This document shows, piece after piece, positions 44,494 through 54,992 of a stretch of DNA of 64,000 nucleotides. The number at the start of each line of letters is the position of its first letter. The first letter of the stretch is position 1. A program made the position numbers and the translations under genes. Source of the stretch: Oikopleura dioica (Eukaryota > Animalia > Chordata); assembly GCA_907165135.1 (NCBI GenBank), contig OU015567.1, forward strand, positions 3,968,001 to 4,032,000, read 5' to 3'. Under the pieces are notes generated by a model, which searched no databases, had not been told where the DNA came from, and was given only the letters and a program-made list of their open reading frames with translations.

Positions 44494-47400
44494 TTATCCA
44501 TTATTACAATTTTTCTCATTGCATAAAGCTCCACAGTGGCCCGGATTGCATGTGCATGTGAACTCTCCGTTATCTTTAACGTCGCACTGGCCATTACCCT
44601 TGGCTTCACATTTAGTGGGACTCTTATTGTCGCATGGAGTAATTTCGCAAAAATCACCAGCAAAATAATCCAGACACTCGCATTCATACGTACTTCCAGT
44701 TATTTGACAGTCAGCACCGTACAGACATTTATTTTCAGAACAAGGTGTTAAGTCGCAAGTGTCTCCAGAATATCCTTCTGGACAAGAACAAGTGAAGCCA
44801 TCGCCACCGAGAACGCAGGTGGCTCCATTAAGGCAGTTGTGATCATCGCATGGTGTTTTTTCGCAATTTTCCCCCGAGTATCCATTTTTACAAGTGCATT
44901 GATAATTTGGGGATGAGCCATCTTCTGAATAATGGCATGTCCCGCCATATTGACATGGTCCTGGAGAACAAGGGGTTTGATAACATTCGTTTCCGGAAAA
45001 CCCATCTTTGCACTCGCAATGATATTTTCCGTCTTGAATTGTGCAAATTCCCCCGTGATCACAAGGCTCGCCTGTGCATGGAGATATTTGACAAAATTGT
45101 CCAGAAAATGGATCAGCACAATCGCATCGATATCCCGAACCGACATCTGTACACGTAAAGTCATTCTTGCAATCATTATTTGAGCAAGGAGTTATTTCAC
45201 AATGGACGCCTGAATATCCCTCGAGACAGTCGCATTCATAAAAATTAGCAGATCGGTCATCTAATACTCGACATGATCCACCATTTTCACAGGTGATATC
45301 GTCACAAGAAGTTTCTTCACAAAATTCACCAGAGTAGCCATCAAGGCAAATGCATTCAAAGTTGCTTGATAATCCCTTTTCGTCGAACTGACATGTTCCG
45401 CCATTATCACAAGTGATGTCTTCACAGGGAGTTTTTTCACAAAACTGACCATCAAATCCGCTCATACAGGCGCATATAAAGGTGCTACCAGTGACGGAGC
45501 AACTTCCTCCGTGTAAACAATCGACAGAAGAACAAGGTGTTTTCTCGCAATGCTCCCCATAATAGCCATCAGGGCAAGCGCAGTTGTACGTTCCGTTATT
45601 GAAGAAAAAACAAGTTCCTTCGTGAAAACATGGACTTGTTGTGCAAGGTGTCGTTTCGCAGTTGTCGCCGGTGAATCCCGTATTACAATTACAAGTATAA
45701 CTCGGAAGATCAACGATGCAACTCCCGTGATTGTTACAAAGTTTGCGGTCTCCTTCATGACAAGGGTCATTTTCGCAAAAATTTCCAGAATAGCCAGGGT
45801 CGCAAATGCACTTATTTTCATTTCCAACGATTTCACAATGGCCATTTTCGCAAATGTCGGGTTTTCTACAGCCAGTAATTTGACAATGCTCGCCAGTTAA
45901 ACCAACTGGACACTCACACTGATATGATCCTTCAGGCGGCAGTTGACATTCTCCTCCATTTTCACAGGGATTGGTATCACATGGTGTTATTTGACAAAGA
46001 TCTCCATCGTATCCATCAAGACAAACACAACTGAATAAGTCACCATCAACCGTGCAAGATCCTCCATTAGCGCACGGACTTTGTGTACAAGGCGTTATTT
46101 GACAATCATCGCCGAAGAATCCGCTATCACATTGACATTCATAACTGTGTTCTTTAACAAGACATACTCCATGACCATTGCAATCGTTTTCCACTCCGTC
46201 TTTGTGACAGGGATCATGCTCACAATCTTTCCCGGTAAATCTGTTTCTGCAAGTGCAATAATATTCGTTTTCGCCGTCGGCAGAACAGGTTCCATTATTT
46301 CCACAGGGCTCATCCTTGCATGGATCAAAAGACTCAAAAGTGAAAGATACTGAAAATGGCCGAGTTTAATTGGAATAATAATTTCGTGATTTATATAATT
46401 TTAGAGCGATAGATAAATTATATTTGTGCGTTGTAATTTCAAGATTTTTTTTGTTGATTCAAATTTTATTTAGCGAACATCAGCCATTTTCAGTACCTTG
46501 GCGGAAGTTGTAGTTGGACTCGTCGTTGTTATCGATGAAGTTGTCGCAGCAGTTGTCTTAATCGAAGTAGTAAGCGTGGTTAAAGTGATTGTTGTTGTTG
46601 TAGATAGCGTCATTGTTGGCGTTGTTGATGTTGTTGTGCTTATTGTTGTTTTGGATTGCGTCGTTGTTTGGGTTGTTGATATTGTTGTGCTTGTTGTTGT
46701 AGTGATTGTTGTTGTTATCATCATGTTCGTCGTTGTAGAAGTTCTCGTTGAAGTTGCCTTGGTGGTGGTCGCTGTCATTCTTGTTGTTGTTGTAATAATT
46801 GCAGAAAGAGTTGTACTTATTATTGGTCTTGTAAAAGTCGTTTTTATTGCAATCGATGTTGTCGTTGATCTCGTGCTTGGAGCGATAGTTGAAATTGAAG
46901 AAAAAGTTGTTGCTAGAGACAACGTTGTTATTTTAGTCGTAGTTGTTGACGTTGTTGTGGTTATCATAATTGTCGATGTCGACGACACAGATGTAGTTGT
47001 TATTGAGGGAGATGTTGCTTGTGTTGTTGAATCTGGGGTTATTGATGTACTGGTGAGTGAATTTGTCGGAGTTACTGAAAATCTTTTATGATTTCAGTAA
47101 AAATTAAAGGTTGACCTGGGCTTTTCGTTGTTGATGTCGAAGATATTGATGAAACAGTAGAAATTGTCGGTAAAGTAGAAGAAGATAAAGCTGTTGTCGA
47201 TATTGTCGAATGAGCAGAAGATGAAGATGTTGAATGTGCTGAAGTTGACAGCGTATTTGTCAAAATTGTTGAAGAGGTCGTTGTTATTGTTGACGGATTT
47301 AACGGACTTGACGTGCTTGTGGTTGAAAGCGATTTTGAAGTTCTACTCGTTGTTGAAAAAGACGAAGTAGGGCTATTTGCTTCTATTGTACTTGTTGAAA

Positions 47401-48113
47401 GCACCGATGGAAAAATAGGCATAGGGACTGGTGAGAAAATAGGATTTGTTGAAACTGTTGAAGAAGGTGATAAGGTTGTGCTTGATGACGATGATGACGT
47501 TCCGGTATTTTCGCAAAGATTTCCGTAAAAGCCATCTGTGCACTGACATGTAAATGAGCCATTTTTCAATGTACACGTTGCTCCATTTTCGCAAGGCAGC
47601 GAGTCACAAGGCGTTATTGCGCATCTGTATCCGGAAAAACCAGCCATACAGGAACACTCATACGTAGCGTCACAAGAACAGGCTGTTATACAATCTTAAA
47701 ACGGAATTGTTTTGTAATATTTCTTTATTTTGAACCTTCATGTTGATCATCGCAAATGGTGAGGCAATATTCAGTCTCGCATTTTAGCCAACACTTTGAT
47801 TTCTCATTTTTACAAAAGCTCATACATTCTGTAAGGGTACAGTCTTCGTATTTTAAGGAGCAAGTGCCATCATACAGGCATGGATTAGGATTGCAAGGGC
47901 TGATTTCTGGCTCAGAAGTCGTCGTTGATGAGGGAGTTGTTTTAAGATTGTTCTTTTTTTGGTCGATTTTTCGATAAATAAAAGGAAATCCAACAGCAAT
48001 AACAGTAAGAATTATCGTTACTAAAAGAAATTTTATGTCTTGATTTCATTTTTCAAGATAAAAAGATATTGGAAACCTGTTGTAAAAGAGATAACAAGCT
48101 TTTGATGCCTCAT
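44494..48113 (-). CDS. N-terminally anchored EGF-array protein with Ser/Thr mucin stalk (copy A)
   Basis: MRHQKLVISFTT, LVTIILTVIAVGFPFIY, two or three EGFs, S/T-rich exons 46470-47500, then a long EGF exon ending CNEKNCNNG*. Confidence 0.85.
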
Positions 48114-48596
48114 TTATTCAATTAACCCTGATTTTCCTCTCTTTTTCATCGTTGTCTCCAAAAAAATATTTCTCGAAAAAGAGTGTTTTATCAAGCAGCA
48201 AATCCTGTCACTTTGTTTATGATATTCTTCCGATTGATATGTTTGATCATTTTGCTGCATAGAAGACGACCCTGGAACTTGCGCTTATCTCAGGGATATC
48301 TTAGTTTATTTATGATTATTTCGAGATTGTTCAAATAAAGACTAATTTTTCTGCGTTCTTTTTTGAACCAGAAAAAATGATGACCTGGTGATCTTCAAAA
48401 CAGAGGTTTTCCGATATGCTGTTGATCTTCAGAGCAAATTATTCTGATTTATCATCAAAATAAGATTTGATAGTTTACTTTATTTTTTCTGGAAAAAAAA
48501 TCAACAAAGAAAACTTGATTTTTAAATATTTTATTTTCTTGAAAATATCGCAGGCTCAAAATATGAGTAAAGAACTTAGACAGTTAAAAAATCTGT

Positions 48597-48770
48597 TCAA
48601 ACATTCACAATATTGGAGTAGTAAATTGTTCTCGGGCGGTAATGTCCAGAGAATCGTGGCTGGTTAGCAACAACTCGGTTGTATCGGTCTCCAGAGTAAA
48701 ATCGTCGACCGGAAATGAATCGGGCTGAGCAGATCTGAGCGAGAATGGCGAGGATGAAGAGAAAGTTCAT
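48597..48770 (-). CDS. Small secreted Arg/Tyr-rich peptide, copy 1 (57 aa)
   Basis: Translated by hand: MNFLFILAILAQICSA-RFISGRRFYSGDRYNRVVANQPRFSGHYRPRTIYYSNIVNV*. The paralog at 49965-50132 conserves frame, start and stop. Confidence 0.85.
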   Translation of the reverse strand: MNFLFILAILAQICSARFISGRRFYSGDRYNRVVANQPRFSGHYRPRTIYYSNIVNV

Positions 48771-48968
48771 TTTGTTATTTTTTAGATAATTTGTCTTTTT
48801 TTATCAAGATGAGGATTGAGAGGCGAAGACGCGCTTATATATTTTCAAAAGAAGCACTGATTCGTGGTAGAAGGGAGCCATCCTCCTTGATTTAGGAGTC
48901 TTTGAGTTTCCATTCTTGATTTCGTAGCACGAAATGACGCCGAAAGAACATCATCGAACGTAGAGAGG

Positions 48969-49078
48969 GGTTATCATTCGAGCCTTTGATTCGAGCCATC
49001 CAATATCTCTAGAATCAAGGGTAGTGGTTAGGGTTAGGGACTTGGAACTCTCAAGGGGCCTTCGCTCGAATGATAACC
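48969..49078. repeat. Short inverted repeat enclosing telomere-like GGTTAGGGTTAGGG
   Basis: 15-bp perfect IR GGTTATCATTCGAGC / GCTCGAATGATAACC. Confidence 0.6.
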
Positions 49079-49299
49079 TTTTACTACCCCATCGAATTTA
49101 GAGCAAATTACTGTAGTTATTAATACCATTTTTTCCTTTGATACTATCAAATTGATACTGTGGATAGAGTTCCAGATGATCGAGGGACAAATTAGCTGAT
49201 ATCTTCACAAAAGTTTTCTTATTGCTTTTTTATTGTTCAAAAATTCCGAAAAACTGTCACGGTGAAATCTGACGATTTTTGAGCTTCTTCGCCAGCGAG

Positions 49300-49604
49300 G
49301 AGGCTTGCAATTAGTCTGGCACGCCTTGTTTTGAAGTCTAAAAAACATGTTCTAGAGATTTTTTAAGGAAAATAGAGGCTCGAAGGTAGAGAAAGTTGGC
49401 CACTTTCCCAAATGAATTTCTCTATAAAATCAGGCGCGGAGCGCATCCTAGGCCCAAGGATGCTTAGTTCAGAAGAAAAAATTATTTTTCCCGAAATAAA
49501 GTTGAGTTCTGGCCATTAGAAATTTCTAAGGAATTTTGCGAAAAATCTCTAGAACGTGTTTTTGAGACTTCAAAACAAGGCGTGCCAGACTAATTGCATA
49601 CTTC
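49300..49604. mobile_element. MITE, possibly Mutator-type
   Basis: About 60-bp inner inverted repeats, GA..TC ends, 10-bp flanking direct repeat CGCCAGCGAG (49290-49299 / 49605-49614). Confidence 0.65.
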
Positions 49605-49964
49605 CGCCAGCGAGCTGCTTTTCGAAGTTCAGTGTTACAAAAATTCGATTCTAGCGATTAACTTCCAAGAAGACAGGTCGCTGTCAAAATTTCAGCAGCA
49701 AAATATTTTTCTCATTCCATCTTAGCGTCAAATCTTTATTCATCGGAGCTTTTGTTATTTTTTGAAGTTCATTTTTCAATCTTTATCAAGAAAAAAAAAC
49801 AAGGTACATGCTCCTGAGCTGCTTTTTGCTGATAGCTTTTGTTTTTATCATTGAGTAAAGAAGTCTGCATGACAAAAAAAGCAAAAAATGTTTTTTTTGG
49901 TTTCATTTTTATTACTATGGATTCTTAGCAATGCCGAAATCTGAAGCAGAGAAAAAGTGACGAT

Positions 49965-50132
49965 TCAGACATTGACGATTGTTGGGTAGTAGATTCGGTT
50001 GTAGTAGTGTCCTGAAAATCGAGGCTTGTCGGCGAAAACTCGGTTGTAGCGAGCTCCATCAAATCTTCGGCCGGAAATGAATCGGGCTGAGCAGAGTTGA
50101 GCGACAATGACGAGGAAGAGGAGGAAGTTCAT
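49965..50132 (-). CDS. Small secreted Arg/Tyr-rich peptide, copy 2 (55 aa)
   Basis: Translated by hand: MNFLLFLVIVAQLCSA-RFISGRRFDGARYNRVFADKPRFSGHYYNRIYYPTIVNV*. Confidence 0.85.
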   Translation of the reverse strand: MNFLLFLVIVAQLCSARFISGRRFDGARYNRVFADKPRFSGHYYNRIYYPTIVNV

Positions 50133-50961
50133 TTTCTTGAGTTTGAAATAGAGGTTTTTTTTATTATTTATATTATTGGTCTTTTTAGAAAGATGAAGAA
50201 TTGGGGAGAGGAGGTGATTTTATATTTCTTGCCGAAGCACTGATTTTCGCGTACAAAGGACATTTCCTCCTTCGTCGATCAGTCCCCAGTCTTGATTCTT
50301 TGCGAAACGGAATCCCTTGACTCAGATTTAATTTATTCATTTTTTGGTCTAGTCGATGTCTTGTTGTTACGAATAGATCAAAGGCAGATTCTTCTTGCAA
50401 ATGAGGATGAGAATTTTGATGAAGAAAATTCTCCCTCATTATTGATGAAAACTATTGTTGAAACTGCTCGAGGCAATGTTTCCAATTCTTTATCGCCGAA
50501 AGCTTTCTGTTAGTGAATAAAGTCCGTGTTATGTGTTATCACCAAAAACACTTAAAATGCGAAACTCGCGAACCCTCCGACCGTGCCCGCGAGCGCCCCC
50601 CTTGATTAGGTAAAGTAATGCCGTGTGTAGCCTTCGACTTTTTTTGGTGCTCTCACGATCGCTAAATTCGGAGATATAATAACTAGTTCAACAAAAAGCT
50701 CATTAAAATCAGGGCATTTTTTTATTTAATAGATGCAGAAGATAGAAAAGTAAAAAGAGACTTTGAAGAAACAAGAAAAATGATAAAGAGATCCATCTTT
50801 GTCGAGTTTTTGACGGCGCTGGCGATAGGGTAAGTCGACCTGGAACTTATGCAATCTGTAGACATTTTTTTACGATAAAGTCGGTCGATTTTCTGACCTG
50901 AGTCGAAGTATTTTTTACGCATTTGATGATTTTTCCATCAAAATTCATCTTTTGTTTAGAT

Positions 50962-53900
50962 ATGTTGTCGGTCAAATTCTCTCATTCACGCTTCTCAAAG
51001 ATGCTACTTGTTTAACAAGGCAAGGATTTATTATTTTTTTAAGATTTTATTTATTATATTATGAGAATTTTTTATGTATCTTATTCTCATGCTCTTAATA
51101 AATATATATTTTCTCTAAAAATAAAAATCCTTTGAAACAGTCGTTTTCTTTCCTCCGAGCCCTTAGGCGACGCTTCCCGCCTGCCTGTAATTGGCGAAGA
51201 AGTCAAGAACTCCAGTGCAAGTGGCGCGGGGTCAAATTCCAAATCTGACCATGTGAAGCAAAAAGTTCACAAGCGCCCGAAACGAAGAATTTTCATCGCC
51301 ATTCATTCCACCCCAGAATATCTCAAAACCCGAGGCCAGGCAATTAAAGACAGTTGGTTGCAAGAAATAGACGAAAGAATCGCAACTGTAAGATTTATTT
51401 CTGCCCCCTTGGAGGGCTTCCCGACTTTTACACTGCCAGATGTGAACGATTACGATTACCCGCCCCAGAAGAAGTCTTTCAAGGATCAGGGATAAAATTC
51501 AGAAGGAAAGAAAACCGCTTTCCGGGTCGATTTAATGTTGAGAAAAATAACCCTAACCCTAACCCTAACCTAACCCTAACCTAACCCTAACCCTAACTGC
51601 TGTTTTTAAATCCTCATAAAAACGGCGCTTCTGATTGTAAGACGGCTTTTGTAAACCCGCAATCTTGTTTCTCTCCTGACAAGATTATCGTTCCGGCAGA
51701 TCTCAGATTCCTGTCGAAATTTTTCAAATCTGAGAGGCGCAAATGACAGTCCAATTATCCAAAGTTTCCACTTGCGCAAAGCCTAAAATTGCCAAAATAT
51801 CAAGTTTTCTGCGTACGAAAGGTTAACCCTGTATGAATCATATCTCATCCCTTACCAAGCTCTTGGCGTATTTCGCAAGCATTGCTGATAAATACGATTG
51901 GTTCATCAGAGTCGATGATGATTTGCACATGCAGTTTGATCACTTGATAAAGTTTTTGTCGAAACTGGATCCGGACGAGCCGCACTACATTGGAGGAACT
52001 GGATTCGGAAGAGATGCAGATGATTACATTCCTCATGGCACGGCGTTTTGCATGGGCGGTAGTGGGGTTTTATTTTCCCATGCGCTTATTACGAAGCTAA
52101 GGCCGTATTTGACCACCTGCATTAAGGTAATTGAAAGCTAGGATCGACAAGCCCCACCCGACACCCGATCGAAAACCGACGTTTTTGTCGGGTTTTTGTT
52201 GGATTCAATTTATTTGATTTAACTTCAGTGTTGTGAAAACCCGACGAGAACCCGACAAAGACCCGATAAAAACCCGAAAAATACCCGACAAAAACCCGAA
52301 AAAAATCCTACAAAAACCCGATAAAAAACCCGACAAAAACCCGACAAAAACCCGATCGGAAAAATCAGAGCTCAAGAAAATCCGATGAAAACCCGATCCG
52401 GATTTCGGGGGCATTTGTCGATCCTAGATTGAAAGCTTTAAAAATATTGAATTAAATGGCTTCTTGTTAAAATATGCCCAAAAAAGCCTCTCAAACTTAG
52501 AAAAAAGCTTGCTGAAATACTGTTTTTTACTCAAATTCCTTATCTTTTGCCGGGGACGCACAAAGAAATGCTGATAGCATTCTTGCTCCCATTATGGCTC
52601 GGGGCCAAAATTAGGACTTTCCCAAAATACTTGTTTTGGGTGAAAGGGAATGAAAAGCGCGTCCTGAGAAGCGGGCGCGCCGCTGTTATCTAGACAAGTT
52701 GTCCCACCGCACATTTGTACCTAGCGATGTCCCGATTAAGGGTCGCTGCGGTGGATAATTTTCGGAATAGAATAATATTATATGAGGGAGATAGTGTTTT
52801 CACAACGATTCGATGCGCTCGTCTTTCCAAATTTGAAGAAATTCTGAAATGTCAGTGTATGAAATTGAACCCTTCGAATTTGAATAATTCGAAATTCTGA
52901 CAGCTGTGACATTTATTTGAGACCTAATTACAGCTCTAGAATTTAATGACCGAGCATGAAGACGTCGAAGTCGGCCGCTGCATTTGGACCCACCTGAACA
53001 TCGACTGTACTAAATCCTATGAAACGAATGAGCTCCTCCATCAAAATTGGAAGAGCCATGTGGCGGCGGGAGAAATTGGATACAAAAATGACATTGACGC
53101 GGAACTGGATCTCGACGAAAAAGTGCTTCATAGCTCGATTACGCTTCATGCAATTAAAAATCCAGTCTCGCAGATAAGGGTCAGAATGAGGATTTTGCGA
53201 CACAGGAATGGTTTCGTTATTGAAAAATATGGTCAACAAGAAAACCATAATATCGACTTTAATGATTGTGTACATAATTTTTTTAGATTGGCAACCATTG
53301 AATATAAACCATCAGTCCATATGACTAATCGATTCCAATCTTTATGATATTGAACAAGTGTTGAGCAGCAAACGAAACCAAAAAAGGGCAAAACAATTAT
53401 ACGGACGAACTCAGTCGATACGTGAGCATATGCGAGATCTCGGCTCTATACGTATCAAATCTAACTTCGAAAGAAAAAGTTTAGACGGCTGCATTTGGTC
53501 ATTTATTCACAATCTCGAAACACGATGGACCGTAACTGATTTTACTCTTGGCCCGATTCCGCATTTTCAAGTTCATAAGCCCTGGCTGGGCATGTTGAAC
53601 AATATCCACGAGGAATACAAGCACATGTTACTGAGCCATCAACTCTATCAATGTATCAATTCGTGAGTCCATTTAAAAAGGCTTGATAATAATTTTTTTT
53701 AGAGACAGAATCGCGTTTCTCCGCTCCCGATCATACAAAAACCAATGGGAACCGCAACTATTCTCTCGAAAATTCTCCGACTCAGTTTTCGTCCACGAGC
53801 AAATGCTCCTCCATGATCTCGTCCGACAAGATCCACGAACAGTCACTTTTATCGTCCCCCTCTTTGGTCGTCTAGACAACTTCAAGCGCTTCGCCGGCGT

Positions 53901-54992
53901 CTACGGACAAATTCTCGAAACGGATCAAAATGTTAATCTCATCGTCTCGCTGTCTGGGGAAGAAAGTGAACGGGATGATATAACACACATCCTGAGGGAC
54001 ACAGTCGGTGCGGAAAACATGGTGGACAAGACAATGGTGGTCTTCTGCGACATTCCGTTTCGGAAAGCGAATTGCCTTCAAAACGCAATCAACGAGCTAG
54101 GAATCGGGTCGAGGAAATCGTTGTTGATTCCGAGCCAAGTGCGTCAATCGCATTGTTGTAGGAATCAGGAGCGCATGACTCATTTCAAATTTGAAAATCG
54201 TCGCTGATCTTTTGGTTCTTATTTTTTATAGTATTGGTATGATAATAATGACGCCTGGAAAAATAAGAAAAAGAAATACTTATTTTTTCGATTTCTCGTC
54301 TTTTGAAGCACTTGAAAATTTGCCGGGCTAAATTTTGAGCACCTTTGTTATGGTCTTCAAAATTTTAGAATGATAGAAGGCCTAACCCGATAAAAGGAGA
54401 TGATGATTTGTTCTTCGTCTACGATGTTGATCTAGTCGTCGATGTCGAATTCATCGAGAGGATAAGAAACATCGCCCAGAGTCATGTTTACTTCCCAGTG
54501 ATTACGAGCCAGTATGAAATTGCCAAGGAGAAGGAGCCAAAGATATCTGGAAACGATGGCTTCTGGAGAGAATGGGGCGTCGGACCAGTTGCGATGACAA
54601 AGGAACGGGCTGTATTTTGATCATGAATTTTCCATATTTTGGAATCACGAAAGAGAATATCATCAAATTTCGTTGATCAATCTAAAAGCCTATGGAAACA
54701 GCAACTGTACAACCAAACTGCCGGCTACAATCAAACAATTTCCGGCTGGGGCAACGAAGACACCGAGTTATACGAAAGCGTCATCGAGCGGAGACTCCCA
54801 TTCATCCGCGCTCGTGACGAAGGCATCTTTCATCCCTGGCACGACAAGAACTGCCATGGACTCTCGAAGGAAACAGGGCAGTACCGTGCCTGTGTCAATG
54901 TCAAGAAGGATCATGTCATGGGAATAATGGATCTGGCGAAGAGATATTTGAAAAATGAAAGCACTCTTTCTTTCTTAGAACTTGATGAATAA
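50962..54992 (+). CDS. CHSY: Chondroitin sulfate synthase (CHSY-like); 5' exons approximate
   Basis: DYDYPPQKKSFK, YDWFIRVDDD, FCMGGSGV, TEHEDVEVGRC, FVYDVD, WREWGVG, GWGNEDTELY, IFHPWH. Confidence 0.92.
51548..51597. repeat. Interstitial telomere-type (TAACCC)n tract in a CHSY intron
   Basis: About 8.5 imperfect hexamer units. Confidence 0.9.
52138..52427. mobile_element. hAT-like MITE in a CHSY intron
   Basis: TIR CTAGGATCGACAA, 8-bp TSD ATTGAAAG (52130-52137 / 52428-52435), internal AAAAACCCGAC subrepeats. Confidence 0.8.

What the first reader, a model, noticed from the sequence alone, without database searches (positions are those of the whole stretch)
48597..50132. Pair of unannotated intronless genes for secreted cationic Arg/Tyr/Gly/Phe peptides
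Seen: two ORFs below the 60-aa track cutoff share start, stop, a 16-aa signal peptide ending CSA, and a mature core RFISGRRF..RYNRV.A..PRFSGHY...IYY..IVNV. Copy 1 has 8 Arg and 1 Asp in 41 residues, no Cys, and a thrice-repeated RF(x)SG motif. Inference: a candidate new antimicrobial peptide family or mucus/house cross-linking peptide. Alternatively, the invariant RFIS-G-RR reads as an amidation plus dibasic cleavage signal that would release RFIS-amide.
Basis: partly seen in the sequence, partly recalled or inferred. Interest (0 to 1): 0.8.

Follow-up and report, generated by a model that had tools for sequence, protein, structure and literature searches.

The report
Orphan secreted cationic peptide gene pair
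Two neighbouring tiny genes in the Okinawa Oikopleura dioica genome look like real, selection-maintained genes for secreted, strongly basic, aromatic-rich peptides of about 40 residues with no relatives elsewhere. Whether they are expressed, and what they do (defence, house matrix or signalling), could not be tested.

Summary
Two minus-strand ORFs, 48597-48770 (57 aa) and 49965-50132 (55 aa), are 72% identical paralogs. They share start, stop, a 16-residue signal-like N-terminus ending CSA, and a Cys-free mature part of net charge +6 to +7.

Evidence that they are coding:
- Amino-acid changes are far fewer than random substitution predicts (14 against 23.3, P about 1.5e-4).
- dN/dS is 0.22 overall and 0.13 after the GRR site.
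- Both CDS indels are 3 nt long.
- Only this frame is open in both copies.
- Each copy has its own TATA box, shared upstream motifs and an AATAAA after the stop.

"Unannotated" is half wrong. The window is OKI2018_I69 chr2, and copy 1 is exon 1 of public model g4990.t1 (CAG5110606.1, 178 aa). That model skips the stop through a 1,260-nt intron and reads a neighbouring Ser/Thr-rich tract in a frame other than its EGF-domain ORF, so it is probably a mis-join. Copy 2 is unannotated.

No true relative turned up in Pfam, PDB, the ESM Atlas, 1.84 billion representative proteins or JGI metagenomes. Expression and conservation in other lineages could not be tested.

The antimicrobial, house cross-linking and RFIS-amide readings remain guesses. 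Strong constraint on the whole chain argues against a mere spacer after RFIS-amide. The scan has noted several other orphan secreted-peptide clusters elsewhere in this genome, none at this locus.

The parts
48597..48770 (-). Copy 1 CDS with stop: 57 codons. Signal-like part 48723-48770, mature 41-residue peptide 48600-48722.
49965..50132 (-). Copy 2 CDS with stop: 55 codons. Signal-like part 50085-50132, mature 39-residue peptide 49968-50084.
   Evidence: Not annotated in the public record.
48834..48841 (-). TATA box TATATAAG of copy 1, 64 nt before the ATG
50217..50224 (-). TATA box TATAAAAT of copy 2, 85 nt before the ATG
48851..48862 (-). Conserved upstream 12-mer AATCAGTGCTTC of copy 1, 10 nt upstream of the TATA box; candidate cis-regulatory site
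   Evidence: (the only two exact matches in the window)
50234..50245 (-). Same conserved 12-mer upstream of copy 2, with the same spacing to the TATA box
48881..48888 (-). Conserved AAGGAGGA block upstream of copy 1
50265..50272 (-). Conserved AAGGAGGA block upstream of copy 2
48806..48811 (-). Conserved CATCTT 30 nt downstream of the TATA start; inferred transcription start region of copy 1
   Evidence: inference
50190..50195 (-). Conserved CATCTT 29 nt downstream of the TATA start; inferred transcription start region of copy 2
   Evidence: inference
48530..48535 (-). AATAAA 62 nt after the stop of copy 1; inferred poly(A) signal
49908..49913 (-). AATAAA 52 nt after the stop of copy 2; inferred poly(A) signal
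46933..47342 (-). Exons 2 (47342-47116) and 3 (47074-46933) of public model g4990.t1, joined to copy 1 through a 1,260-nt intron. Judged not to belong to the peptide gene.

Best explanation
These are two tandemly duplicated, single-exon genes of Oikopleura dioica (Okinawa lineage). Each has its own TATA promoter and poly(A) signal and would give an mRNA of about 300 nt. The product is a 55-57-residue pre-peptide. Its 16-residue signal peptide is cut after C-S-A, releasing a peptide of about 5 kDa that is Cys-free, strongly basic (net +6 to +7), rich in Arg/Tyr/Phe and without a stable fold. I infer that the whole chain of about 40 residues is the active product outside the cell. It would bind polyanionic targets through Arg and aromatic side chains, most likely as a lineage-restricted host-defence (antimicrobial-type) peptide. 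Shown: the ORFs, their paralogy, coding-type purifying selection over the whole mature chain, the promoter-like and poly(A)-like signals, and the absence of relatives. Inferred: transcription, secretion, the cleavage site and the target.
For: The ORFs are present and 72% identical. NG86 dN/dS is 0.22 overall, 0.15 for the mature part and 0.13 for residues 24-57, at dS of about 1.6. A Monte Carlo of the observed substitutions gives P about 1.5e-4 for so few amino-acid changes. CDS nucleotide identity is 79% with two 3-nt gaps, against 62% upstream and 53% downstream with gaps of 1, 7, 15, 11, 2 and 5 nt. Only this frame is open in both copies. CDS GC is 46-49% against 29-37% in the flanks. TATA boxes, a shared 12-mer and AAGGAGGA lie at conserved spacing, A sits at -3 of the ATG, and AATAAA follows the stop by 52-62 nt. 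Mature pI is 10.6-11.3, with 8 basic residues, 1-2 acidic residues, 9-10 aromatic residues (His included) and no Cys. AlphaFold2 gives pLDDT 55 and pTM 0.14, so no fold is predicted. Pfam, the word index, the Atlas, PDB and exhaustive HMMER give no true relative other than the locus's own model.
Against: No transcript evidence was obtained. The four RNA runs laid gave essentially zero reads over the whole 5.2 kb, neighbours included, so they are no test, and no listed run holds the stretch. Conservation rests on only two paralogs from one genome, because no ortholog from another lineage could be fetched. The signal peptide was judged by inspection, not by a predictor. Nothing speaks specifically for antimicrobial action beyond charge and size. 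The chain is not amphipathic-helical, and no induction or tissue data exist.
Confidence: 0.45

Rival explanations
1. Neuropeptide or hormone precursor. After signal cleavage, a prohormone convertase cuts at the invariant R-R, a carboxypeptidase trims it and the Gly is turned into an amide. This gives RFIS-amide plus a C-terminal peptide of 32-34 residues, and either or both would signal through a receptor.
For: R-F-I-S-G-R-R is invariant between the copies, with only synonymous changes (2 synonymous, 0 non-synonymous). G followed by a dibasic pair is the classical amidation-plus-cleavage signal (established knowledge). The precursors are small and begin with a signal peptide.
Against: There is only one such site per precursor. 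The product would end in Ser-amide, not in RF-amide. The 34 residues after the site are as strongly constrained (dN/dS 0.13) as a bioactive peptide would be, and they are basic rather than an acidic spacer. Pfam finds no neuropeptide family. An earlier follow-up on another Arg-rich cluster in this genome also did not favour this reading (not independent evidence).
Confidence: 0.15
2. Structural additive of the house or another extracellular matrix. The basic, Tyr/Phe-rich, unfolded peptide sticks to acidic or cellulosic matrix. It may be cross-linked through tyrosines, like small Arg/Tyr-rich adhesive proteins of mussels.
For: The composition is 12-13% Tyr, 18-20% Arg and no Cys, with no predicted fold. 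The house proteome contains peroxidasin-like oikosins 21a and 21b, which are discussed as matrix cross-linkers (PMC3390340). The neighbouring genes are secreted-type EGF/mucin-like genes and a chondroitin synthase.
Against: No expression data place it in the oikoplastic epithelium. Gene neighbourhood means little in animals. There is no sequence similarity to any oikosin or adhesive protein. Gly and Asn are far less abundant than in mussel foot protein 3 (own knowledge).
Confidence: 0.17
3. The public model is right. The ORF of copy 1 is only the first exon of a 178-residue protein (g4990.t1), and the in-frame stop is skipped by splicing.
For: CAG5110606.1 exists in the OKI2018_I69 annotation, which was made by AUGUSTUS with RNA-seq hints. 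The GT of the last Val codon can serve as a donor in both copies.
Against: The intron would be 1,260 nt against a median of 49 nt in this genome. The donor GTTTGA is weak and the acceptor has no pyrimidine tract. Exons 2-3 give an Asn-rich low-complexity tail by reading a Ser/Thr-rich tract in a different frame from the ORF that carries a Pfam EGF domain. Copy 2 keeps the same stop, similarity between the copies ends about 100 nt after it, and both copies have AATAAA just after the stop.
Confidence: 0.07
4. The ORFs are not expressed genes. They would be a recently silenced duplicate pair or a conserved non-coding element that happens to be open.
For: No transcript evidence was found. The ORFs are short, and no relatives are known anywhere.
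Against: The codon-phase pattern of substitutions, the in-frame indels and dN/dS of 0.13-0.22 at near-saturated dS require long-term selection on the protein. A non-coding element would not spare amino acids.
Confidence: 0.1

Closest known systems
Other orphan small secreted cationic peptide gene clusters of Oikopleura dioica noted by this scan (s1-319403, s1-346148, s1-400271, s1-365283)
   Same: They are in the same genome and are tiny, often intronless, tandemly duplicated genes. They encode a signal peptide plus a basic peptide of 40-70 residues, have no relatives outside the species and have unknown function.
   Different: They are at different loci, 0.85-3.5 Mb away or on other pieces. 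Sequence relationship to this pair was not testable here. The profile search found no other annotated O. dioica protein related to this pair.
Tunicate antimicrobial peptides (styelins and clavanins of Styela, Ci-MAM-A and Ci-PAP-A of Ciona); own knowledge
   Same: They are small, secreted, cationic, aromatic-rich peptides of tunicates made from short precursors.
   Different: Those are amphipathic helices with pro-regions, made in haemocytes. Here no helix or fold is predicted, there is no pro-region and no sequence similarity was detected.
FMRFamide-related / RFamide neuropeptide precursors
   Same: They have a signal peptide followed by a short peptide that ends before G plus a dibasic site.
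   Different: The residue before Gly is Ser, so the product would not be an RF-amide. There is a single site rather than several copies, the remainder is conserved and basic, and Pfam gives no hit.
Mussel foot protein 3 type adhesive peptides; own knowledge
   Same: They are about 5 kDa, Cys-free, Arg/Tyr-rich, unfolded, secreted and occur as paralogous variants.
   Different: This is a resemblance of composition only. The present peptides have much less Gly and Asn, no evidence of DOPA chemistry exists here, and the organisms are unrelated.
Caenorhabditis elegans NLP/CNC Gly/Tyr-rich peptide clusters; own knowledge
   Same: They are tandem clusters of tiny secreted aromatic and basic peptide genes. 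They were first read as neuropeptide-like and later shown to act in epidermal defence.
   Different: There are no Gly-Tyr repeats here, no homology and no induction data.

Membership tests
RFamide / FMRFamide-related neuropeptide precursors | Peptide ending in R-F directly before the Gly amide donor and a basic cleavage site | tested here: not met
   The motif is R-F-I-S-G-R-R, so Ser precedes Gly.
RFamide / FMRFamide-related neuropeptide precursors | Several peptide copies flanked by basic sites, or a Pfam FARP-type match | tested here: not met
   There is one G-R-R site per precursor and no Pfam family up to E 10.
Described antimicrobial peptide families | Sequence match to a curated family or a solved structure | tested here: not met
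   Pfam gives none. The best PDB hit has E 2.3. The best Atlas score is 0.83, at background level.
Described antimicrobial peptide families | Measured killing of microbes, or induction on infection | not testable with these tools
   This needs synthetic peptide assays and challenge experiments.
NHL-repeat / TPR-repeat proteins (the bacterial hits of the profile search) | Significant match of the peptide to a single repeat unit | tested here: not met
   Per-repeat scores are 1-17 bits, and the E-values arise from summing 3-11 repeats. Two unrelated repeat folds are hit. Pfam NHL and TPR models do not match.
Oikosins (Oikopleura house proteins) | Detected in the house proteome, or expressed in the oikoplastic epithelium | not testable with these tools
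   No expression data were obtained. The house proteome paper has no occurrence of 'tyrosine' or 'arginine', and its single occurrence of 'basic' is not about protein charge, so it describes no such peptide.
Secreted proteins with a classical signal peptide | Short N-region, hydrophobic core of about 10 residues, small residues at -3 and -1 | tested here: met
   By inspection: M-N, then an 11-residue hydrophobic core, then C-S-A in both copies. No signal-peptide predictor was available.
Protein-coding gene (against a chance ORF) | Purifying selection in the reading frame between homologs | tested here: met
   dN/dS is 0.22, P is about 1.5e-4, the indels are in frame and only this frame is open in both copies.
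Protein-coding gene (against a chance ORF) | Transcript evidence | tested here: inconclusive
   The four RNA runs laid no reads anywhere on the 5.2 kb, including the neighbours. DNA of other lineages is only 79-87% identical even in a conserved exon, so the 90% threshold probably excluded them.

The most novel reading that the evidence does not exclude
The pair founds a larvacean-specific family of unfolded Arg/Tyr/Phe-rich secreted peptides with a real extracellular activity, either antimicrobial defence of the animal and its house or a new signalling peptide. It would be one of many such orphan peptide clusters that make up a hidden secreted peptidome in the compact Oikopleura genome.
Probability: 0.25. 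Interest if true: 0.55.

Novelty: new variant of a known kind. Interest (0 to 1): 0.35.

Why it matters
If expressed, these genes add to a growing set of small secreted peptide genes that standard annotation of the Oikopleura genome misses or mis-joins. Here one copy is absent from the annotation and the other is fused to an out-of-frame tail. Larvaceans are key marine grazers and close relatives of vertebrates, and little is known about their innate defence or about the small components of the house. A Cys-free cationic 40-mer is cheap to synthesise and test. The practical point for annotators is that g4990.t1 should be re-examined, and a short-ORF-aware pass using paralog or ortholog conservation would recover such genes.

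Tried and rejected
- Homology to bacterial NHL-like and TPR repeat proteins (P0002-P0007; best E 3.9e-15) was rejected. Scores per repeat are at most 17 bits, the totals come from summing repeats, and two unrelated folds are hit.
- The word-index protein search with copy 1 found no candidate.
- Exact look-up of both peptides in public gene calls found nothing on record.
- Scans of viral contigs and JGI metagenome contigs, by peptide patterns and by a degenerate DNA pattern over C-S-A-R-F-I-S-G-R-R-F, found no relative.
- Two attempts to reach the orthologous locus of other lineages through neighbours failed. The 566-aa EGF ORF returned only generic EGF proteins and the neighbouring paralog g4988. 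A chondroitin-synthase exon returned two metagenome contigs of 673 and 960 nt, too short to reach the peptide genes.
- RNA reads gave no test.
- Structure prediction had low confidence, so no fold search was made.
- Rfam found nothing in 47500-51200.
- Paper searches (Oikopleura with antimicrobial peptide, neuropeptide, micropeptide, oikosin) found no description of such peptides.
- A transposon-borne ORF was considered and rejected. There are only two copies in 64 kb, no terminal repeats around the roughly 480-nt duplicated unit, and no other annotated relative in the proteome.

Full report
**What is there**

The two ORFs are on the minus strand at 48597-48770 (57 aa) and 49965-50132 (55 aa). 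They are 72% identical in protein (41/57, E 6e-26). They share the start codon, the stop position, a 16-residue hydrophobic N-terminus ending C-S-A, and conserved blocks along the whole remaining chain.

The mature parts have 41 and 39 residues. They contain 8 basic and 1-2 acidic residues, 5 Tyr, 3-4 Phe and no Cys, with pI 11.3 and 10.6 and masses of 4,984 and 4,773 Da. The R-F-(x)-S-G motif occurs three times in copy 1. In copy 2 the middle one is RFDG. tblastn finds no third copy in the window.

**Is it more than chance?**

Yes, and the conservation is of the coding kind.
- An alignment of about 450 nt around each copy shows 79% identity in the CDS with two gaps of exactly 3 nt. Upstream identity is 62% and downstream 53%, with gaps of 1, 7, 15, 11, 2, 1 and 5 nt.
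- The 37 substitutions in the CDS cause 14 amino-acid differences. The same number and type of substitutions placed at random cause 23.3 +/- 2.3, giving P about 1.5e-4. Only a quarter of such random sets avoid a premature stop.
- Nei-Gojobori dN/dS is 0.22 overall and 0.15 for the mature part.
- Of the six frames, only the proposed one is open in both copies.
- CDS GC is 46-49% against 29-37% in the flanks.

**Gene anatomy (sequence shown, function of the signals inferred)**

Each copy has the same set of signals:
- a TATA box, TATATAAG at 48834-48841 and TATAAAAT at 50217-50224;
- an identical 12-mer, AATCAGTGCTTC, 10 nt upstream of the TATA box, the only two exact matches in the window;
- a shared AAGGAGGA block further upstream;
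- a shared CATCTT 29-30 nt downstream of the TATA start, where transcription would begin;
- A at -3 of the ATG;
- an AATAAA 52-62 nt after the stop.

Similarity between the copies fades about 100 nt after the stop, so there is no conserved second exon. The simplest reading is two monocistronic, single-exon transcription units of about 300 nt, about 1.36 kb apart. MITE-like inverted repeats lie between them. Rfam finds no RNA family in the region.

**Where it comes from, and what the public annotation says**

The exhaustive profile search of 1.84 billion representative proteins found one true relative, P0001 (E 9.6e-34). This is CAG5110606.1, Oidioi.mRNA.OKI2018_I69.chr2.g4990.t1 of Oikopleura dioica. 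Its contig OU015567.1 is identical to the window over 21.8 kb, so the window is the Okinawa assembly itself.

The model uses the first 56 codons of copy 1. It then takes the GT of the last Val codon as a splice donor (GTTTGA) and skips 1,260 nt. It adds two exons, 47342-47116 and 47074-46933. These encode an Asn-rich low-complexity tail.

Those exons lie in a Ser/Thr-rich tract, and they are in a different frame from ORF 47647-47072. That ORF starts with a Pfam EGF domain (frame offset).

The median intron in this annotation is 49 nt, and the models come from AUGUSTUS with RNA-seq hints (PMC8008620). The 1,260-nt intron, the weak splice sites, the out-of-frame low-complexity tail, the conserved stop in copy 2 and the AATAAA after both stops together make the model a probable mis-join. 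A spliced read would overturn this.

Copy 2 has no gene call. Nothing is annotated between the chondroitin synthase gene and g4990.

**Relatives**

None were found. The searches were:
- Pfam up to E 10;
- the 5.8-billion-protein word index;
- exact look-ups;
- ESM Atlas features, best 0.83, which is background;
- PDB, best E 2.3;
- IMG/VR and JGI metagenome scans.

The remaining profile hits (P0002-P0007) are bacterial NHL-like and TPR repeat proteins. Each repeat scores only 1-17 bits, the E-values come from summing up to 11 repeats, and two unrelated folds are hit. I treat them as chance.

**What could not be tested**

Expression was not tested. No listed public run holds the stretch. The four RNA runs that I laid at 90% identity or more gave one read or none over 5.2 kb, including exons of both neighbouring genes. 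That is no test. Two marine metagenome contigs with an Oikopleura-like chondroitin synthase exon are only 79% and 87% identical to the window in DNA. Runs from other cryptic lineages would therefore fail a 90% threshold.

Conservation in other lineages was not tested either, because I could not reach an orthologous locus. The evidence for selection thus rests on two paralogs of one genome.

**How it most likely works**

A 16-residue signal peptide, with small residues at -3 and -1 (judged by inspection), would send the product into the secretory pathway. What leaves is a Cys-free, very basic, aromatic-rich chain of about 5 kDa for which AlphaFold2 predicts no fold (pLDDT 55, pTM 0.14).

The key discriminating result is that the 34 residues after the invariant G-R-R are under strong constraint (dN/dS 0.13 at dS about 1.6), down to the last four residues and the stop. 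That fits a product that works as a whole chain better than a precursor whose only purpose is an N-terminal tetrapeptide amide.

I therefore favour an intact polycationic peptide that binds anionic targets. Host defence is the single most likely role (about 0.3 within an overall 0.45 for the statement). A house or matrix additive comes next (0.17). The house proteome contains peroxidasin-like oikosins that could cross-link tyrosines (PMC3390340), but nothing ties these genes to the house. The neuropeptide reading keeps about 0.15, because G-R-R is invariant with synonymous changes only.

**Comparison with what is known**

The kind of gene is familiar: lineage-restricted, tandemly duplicated genes for small secreted cationic peptides. 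Tunicate antimicrobial peptides, nematode NLP/CNC clusters and mussel foot protein 3 are functional or compositional analogues (own knowledge). None is a sequence relative, and the RFamide membership test fails on its defining feature.

Earlier notes of this scan report several other clusters of orphan small secreted peptides in the same genome. I could not test whether any is related to this pair. They suggest that the phenomenon is general in this genome, which lowers the surprise of this one locus and raises the value of a systematic short-ORF annotation.

**Verdict**

- The genes are probably real (about 0.85), with an error in the public model.
- Function and expression are open.
- Interest is moderate (0.35).

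Noticed in passing
window 49299-49605: A hairpin or MITE-like element lies between the two peptide genes. It has inverted arms of 65 nt, 92% complementary, around a 177-nt loop. A smaller one with 24-nt arms is at 48960-49087.
   Followed up: no
window 46470-47647, minus strand: ORF 47647-47072 encodes an EGF domain (Pfam E 1e-6) followed by a Ser/Thr-rich tract, and ORF 46988-46470 is Thr-rich. Neither is annotated in that frame. Public model g4990.t1 reads 47342-46933 in another frame. They are probably unrecognised 5' exons of the mucin-like EGF gene g4989 at 46217-44494.
   Followed up: partly
window 48597-48770 versus 49965-50132: Synonymous divergence is uneven: dS is 0.27 in codons 1-23 and 1.57 in codons 24-57. 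This suggests gene conversion of the 5' part, or a nucleotide-level constraint around the start.
   Followed up: partly
L002 (JGI 3300060457, 960 nt) and L003 (ENA ERZ23498944, 673 nt): These marine metagenome contigs carry an Oikopleura-like chondroitin synthase exon at 79% and 87% DNA identity to window 51761-52572. They are presumably from other cryptic O. dioica lineages.
   Followed up: partly
window 50780-54992, plus strand: A chondroitin sulfate synthase-type gene (Fringe + CHGN + Glyco_transf_7C; 706-aa public model) starts about 650 nt from the ATG of copy 2 in divergent orientation.
   Followed up: no
P0002-P0007 (bacterial proteins): A 28-residue stretch of the peptide aligns at about 39% identity to single blades of actinobacterial NHL-like repeats. 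Summed over the repeats this gives a misleading E of 3.9e-15.
   Followed up: yes
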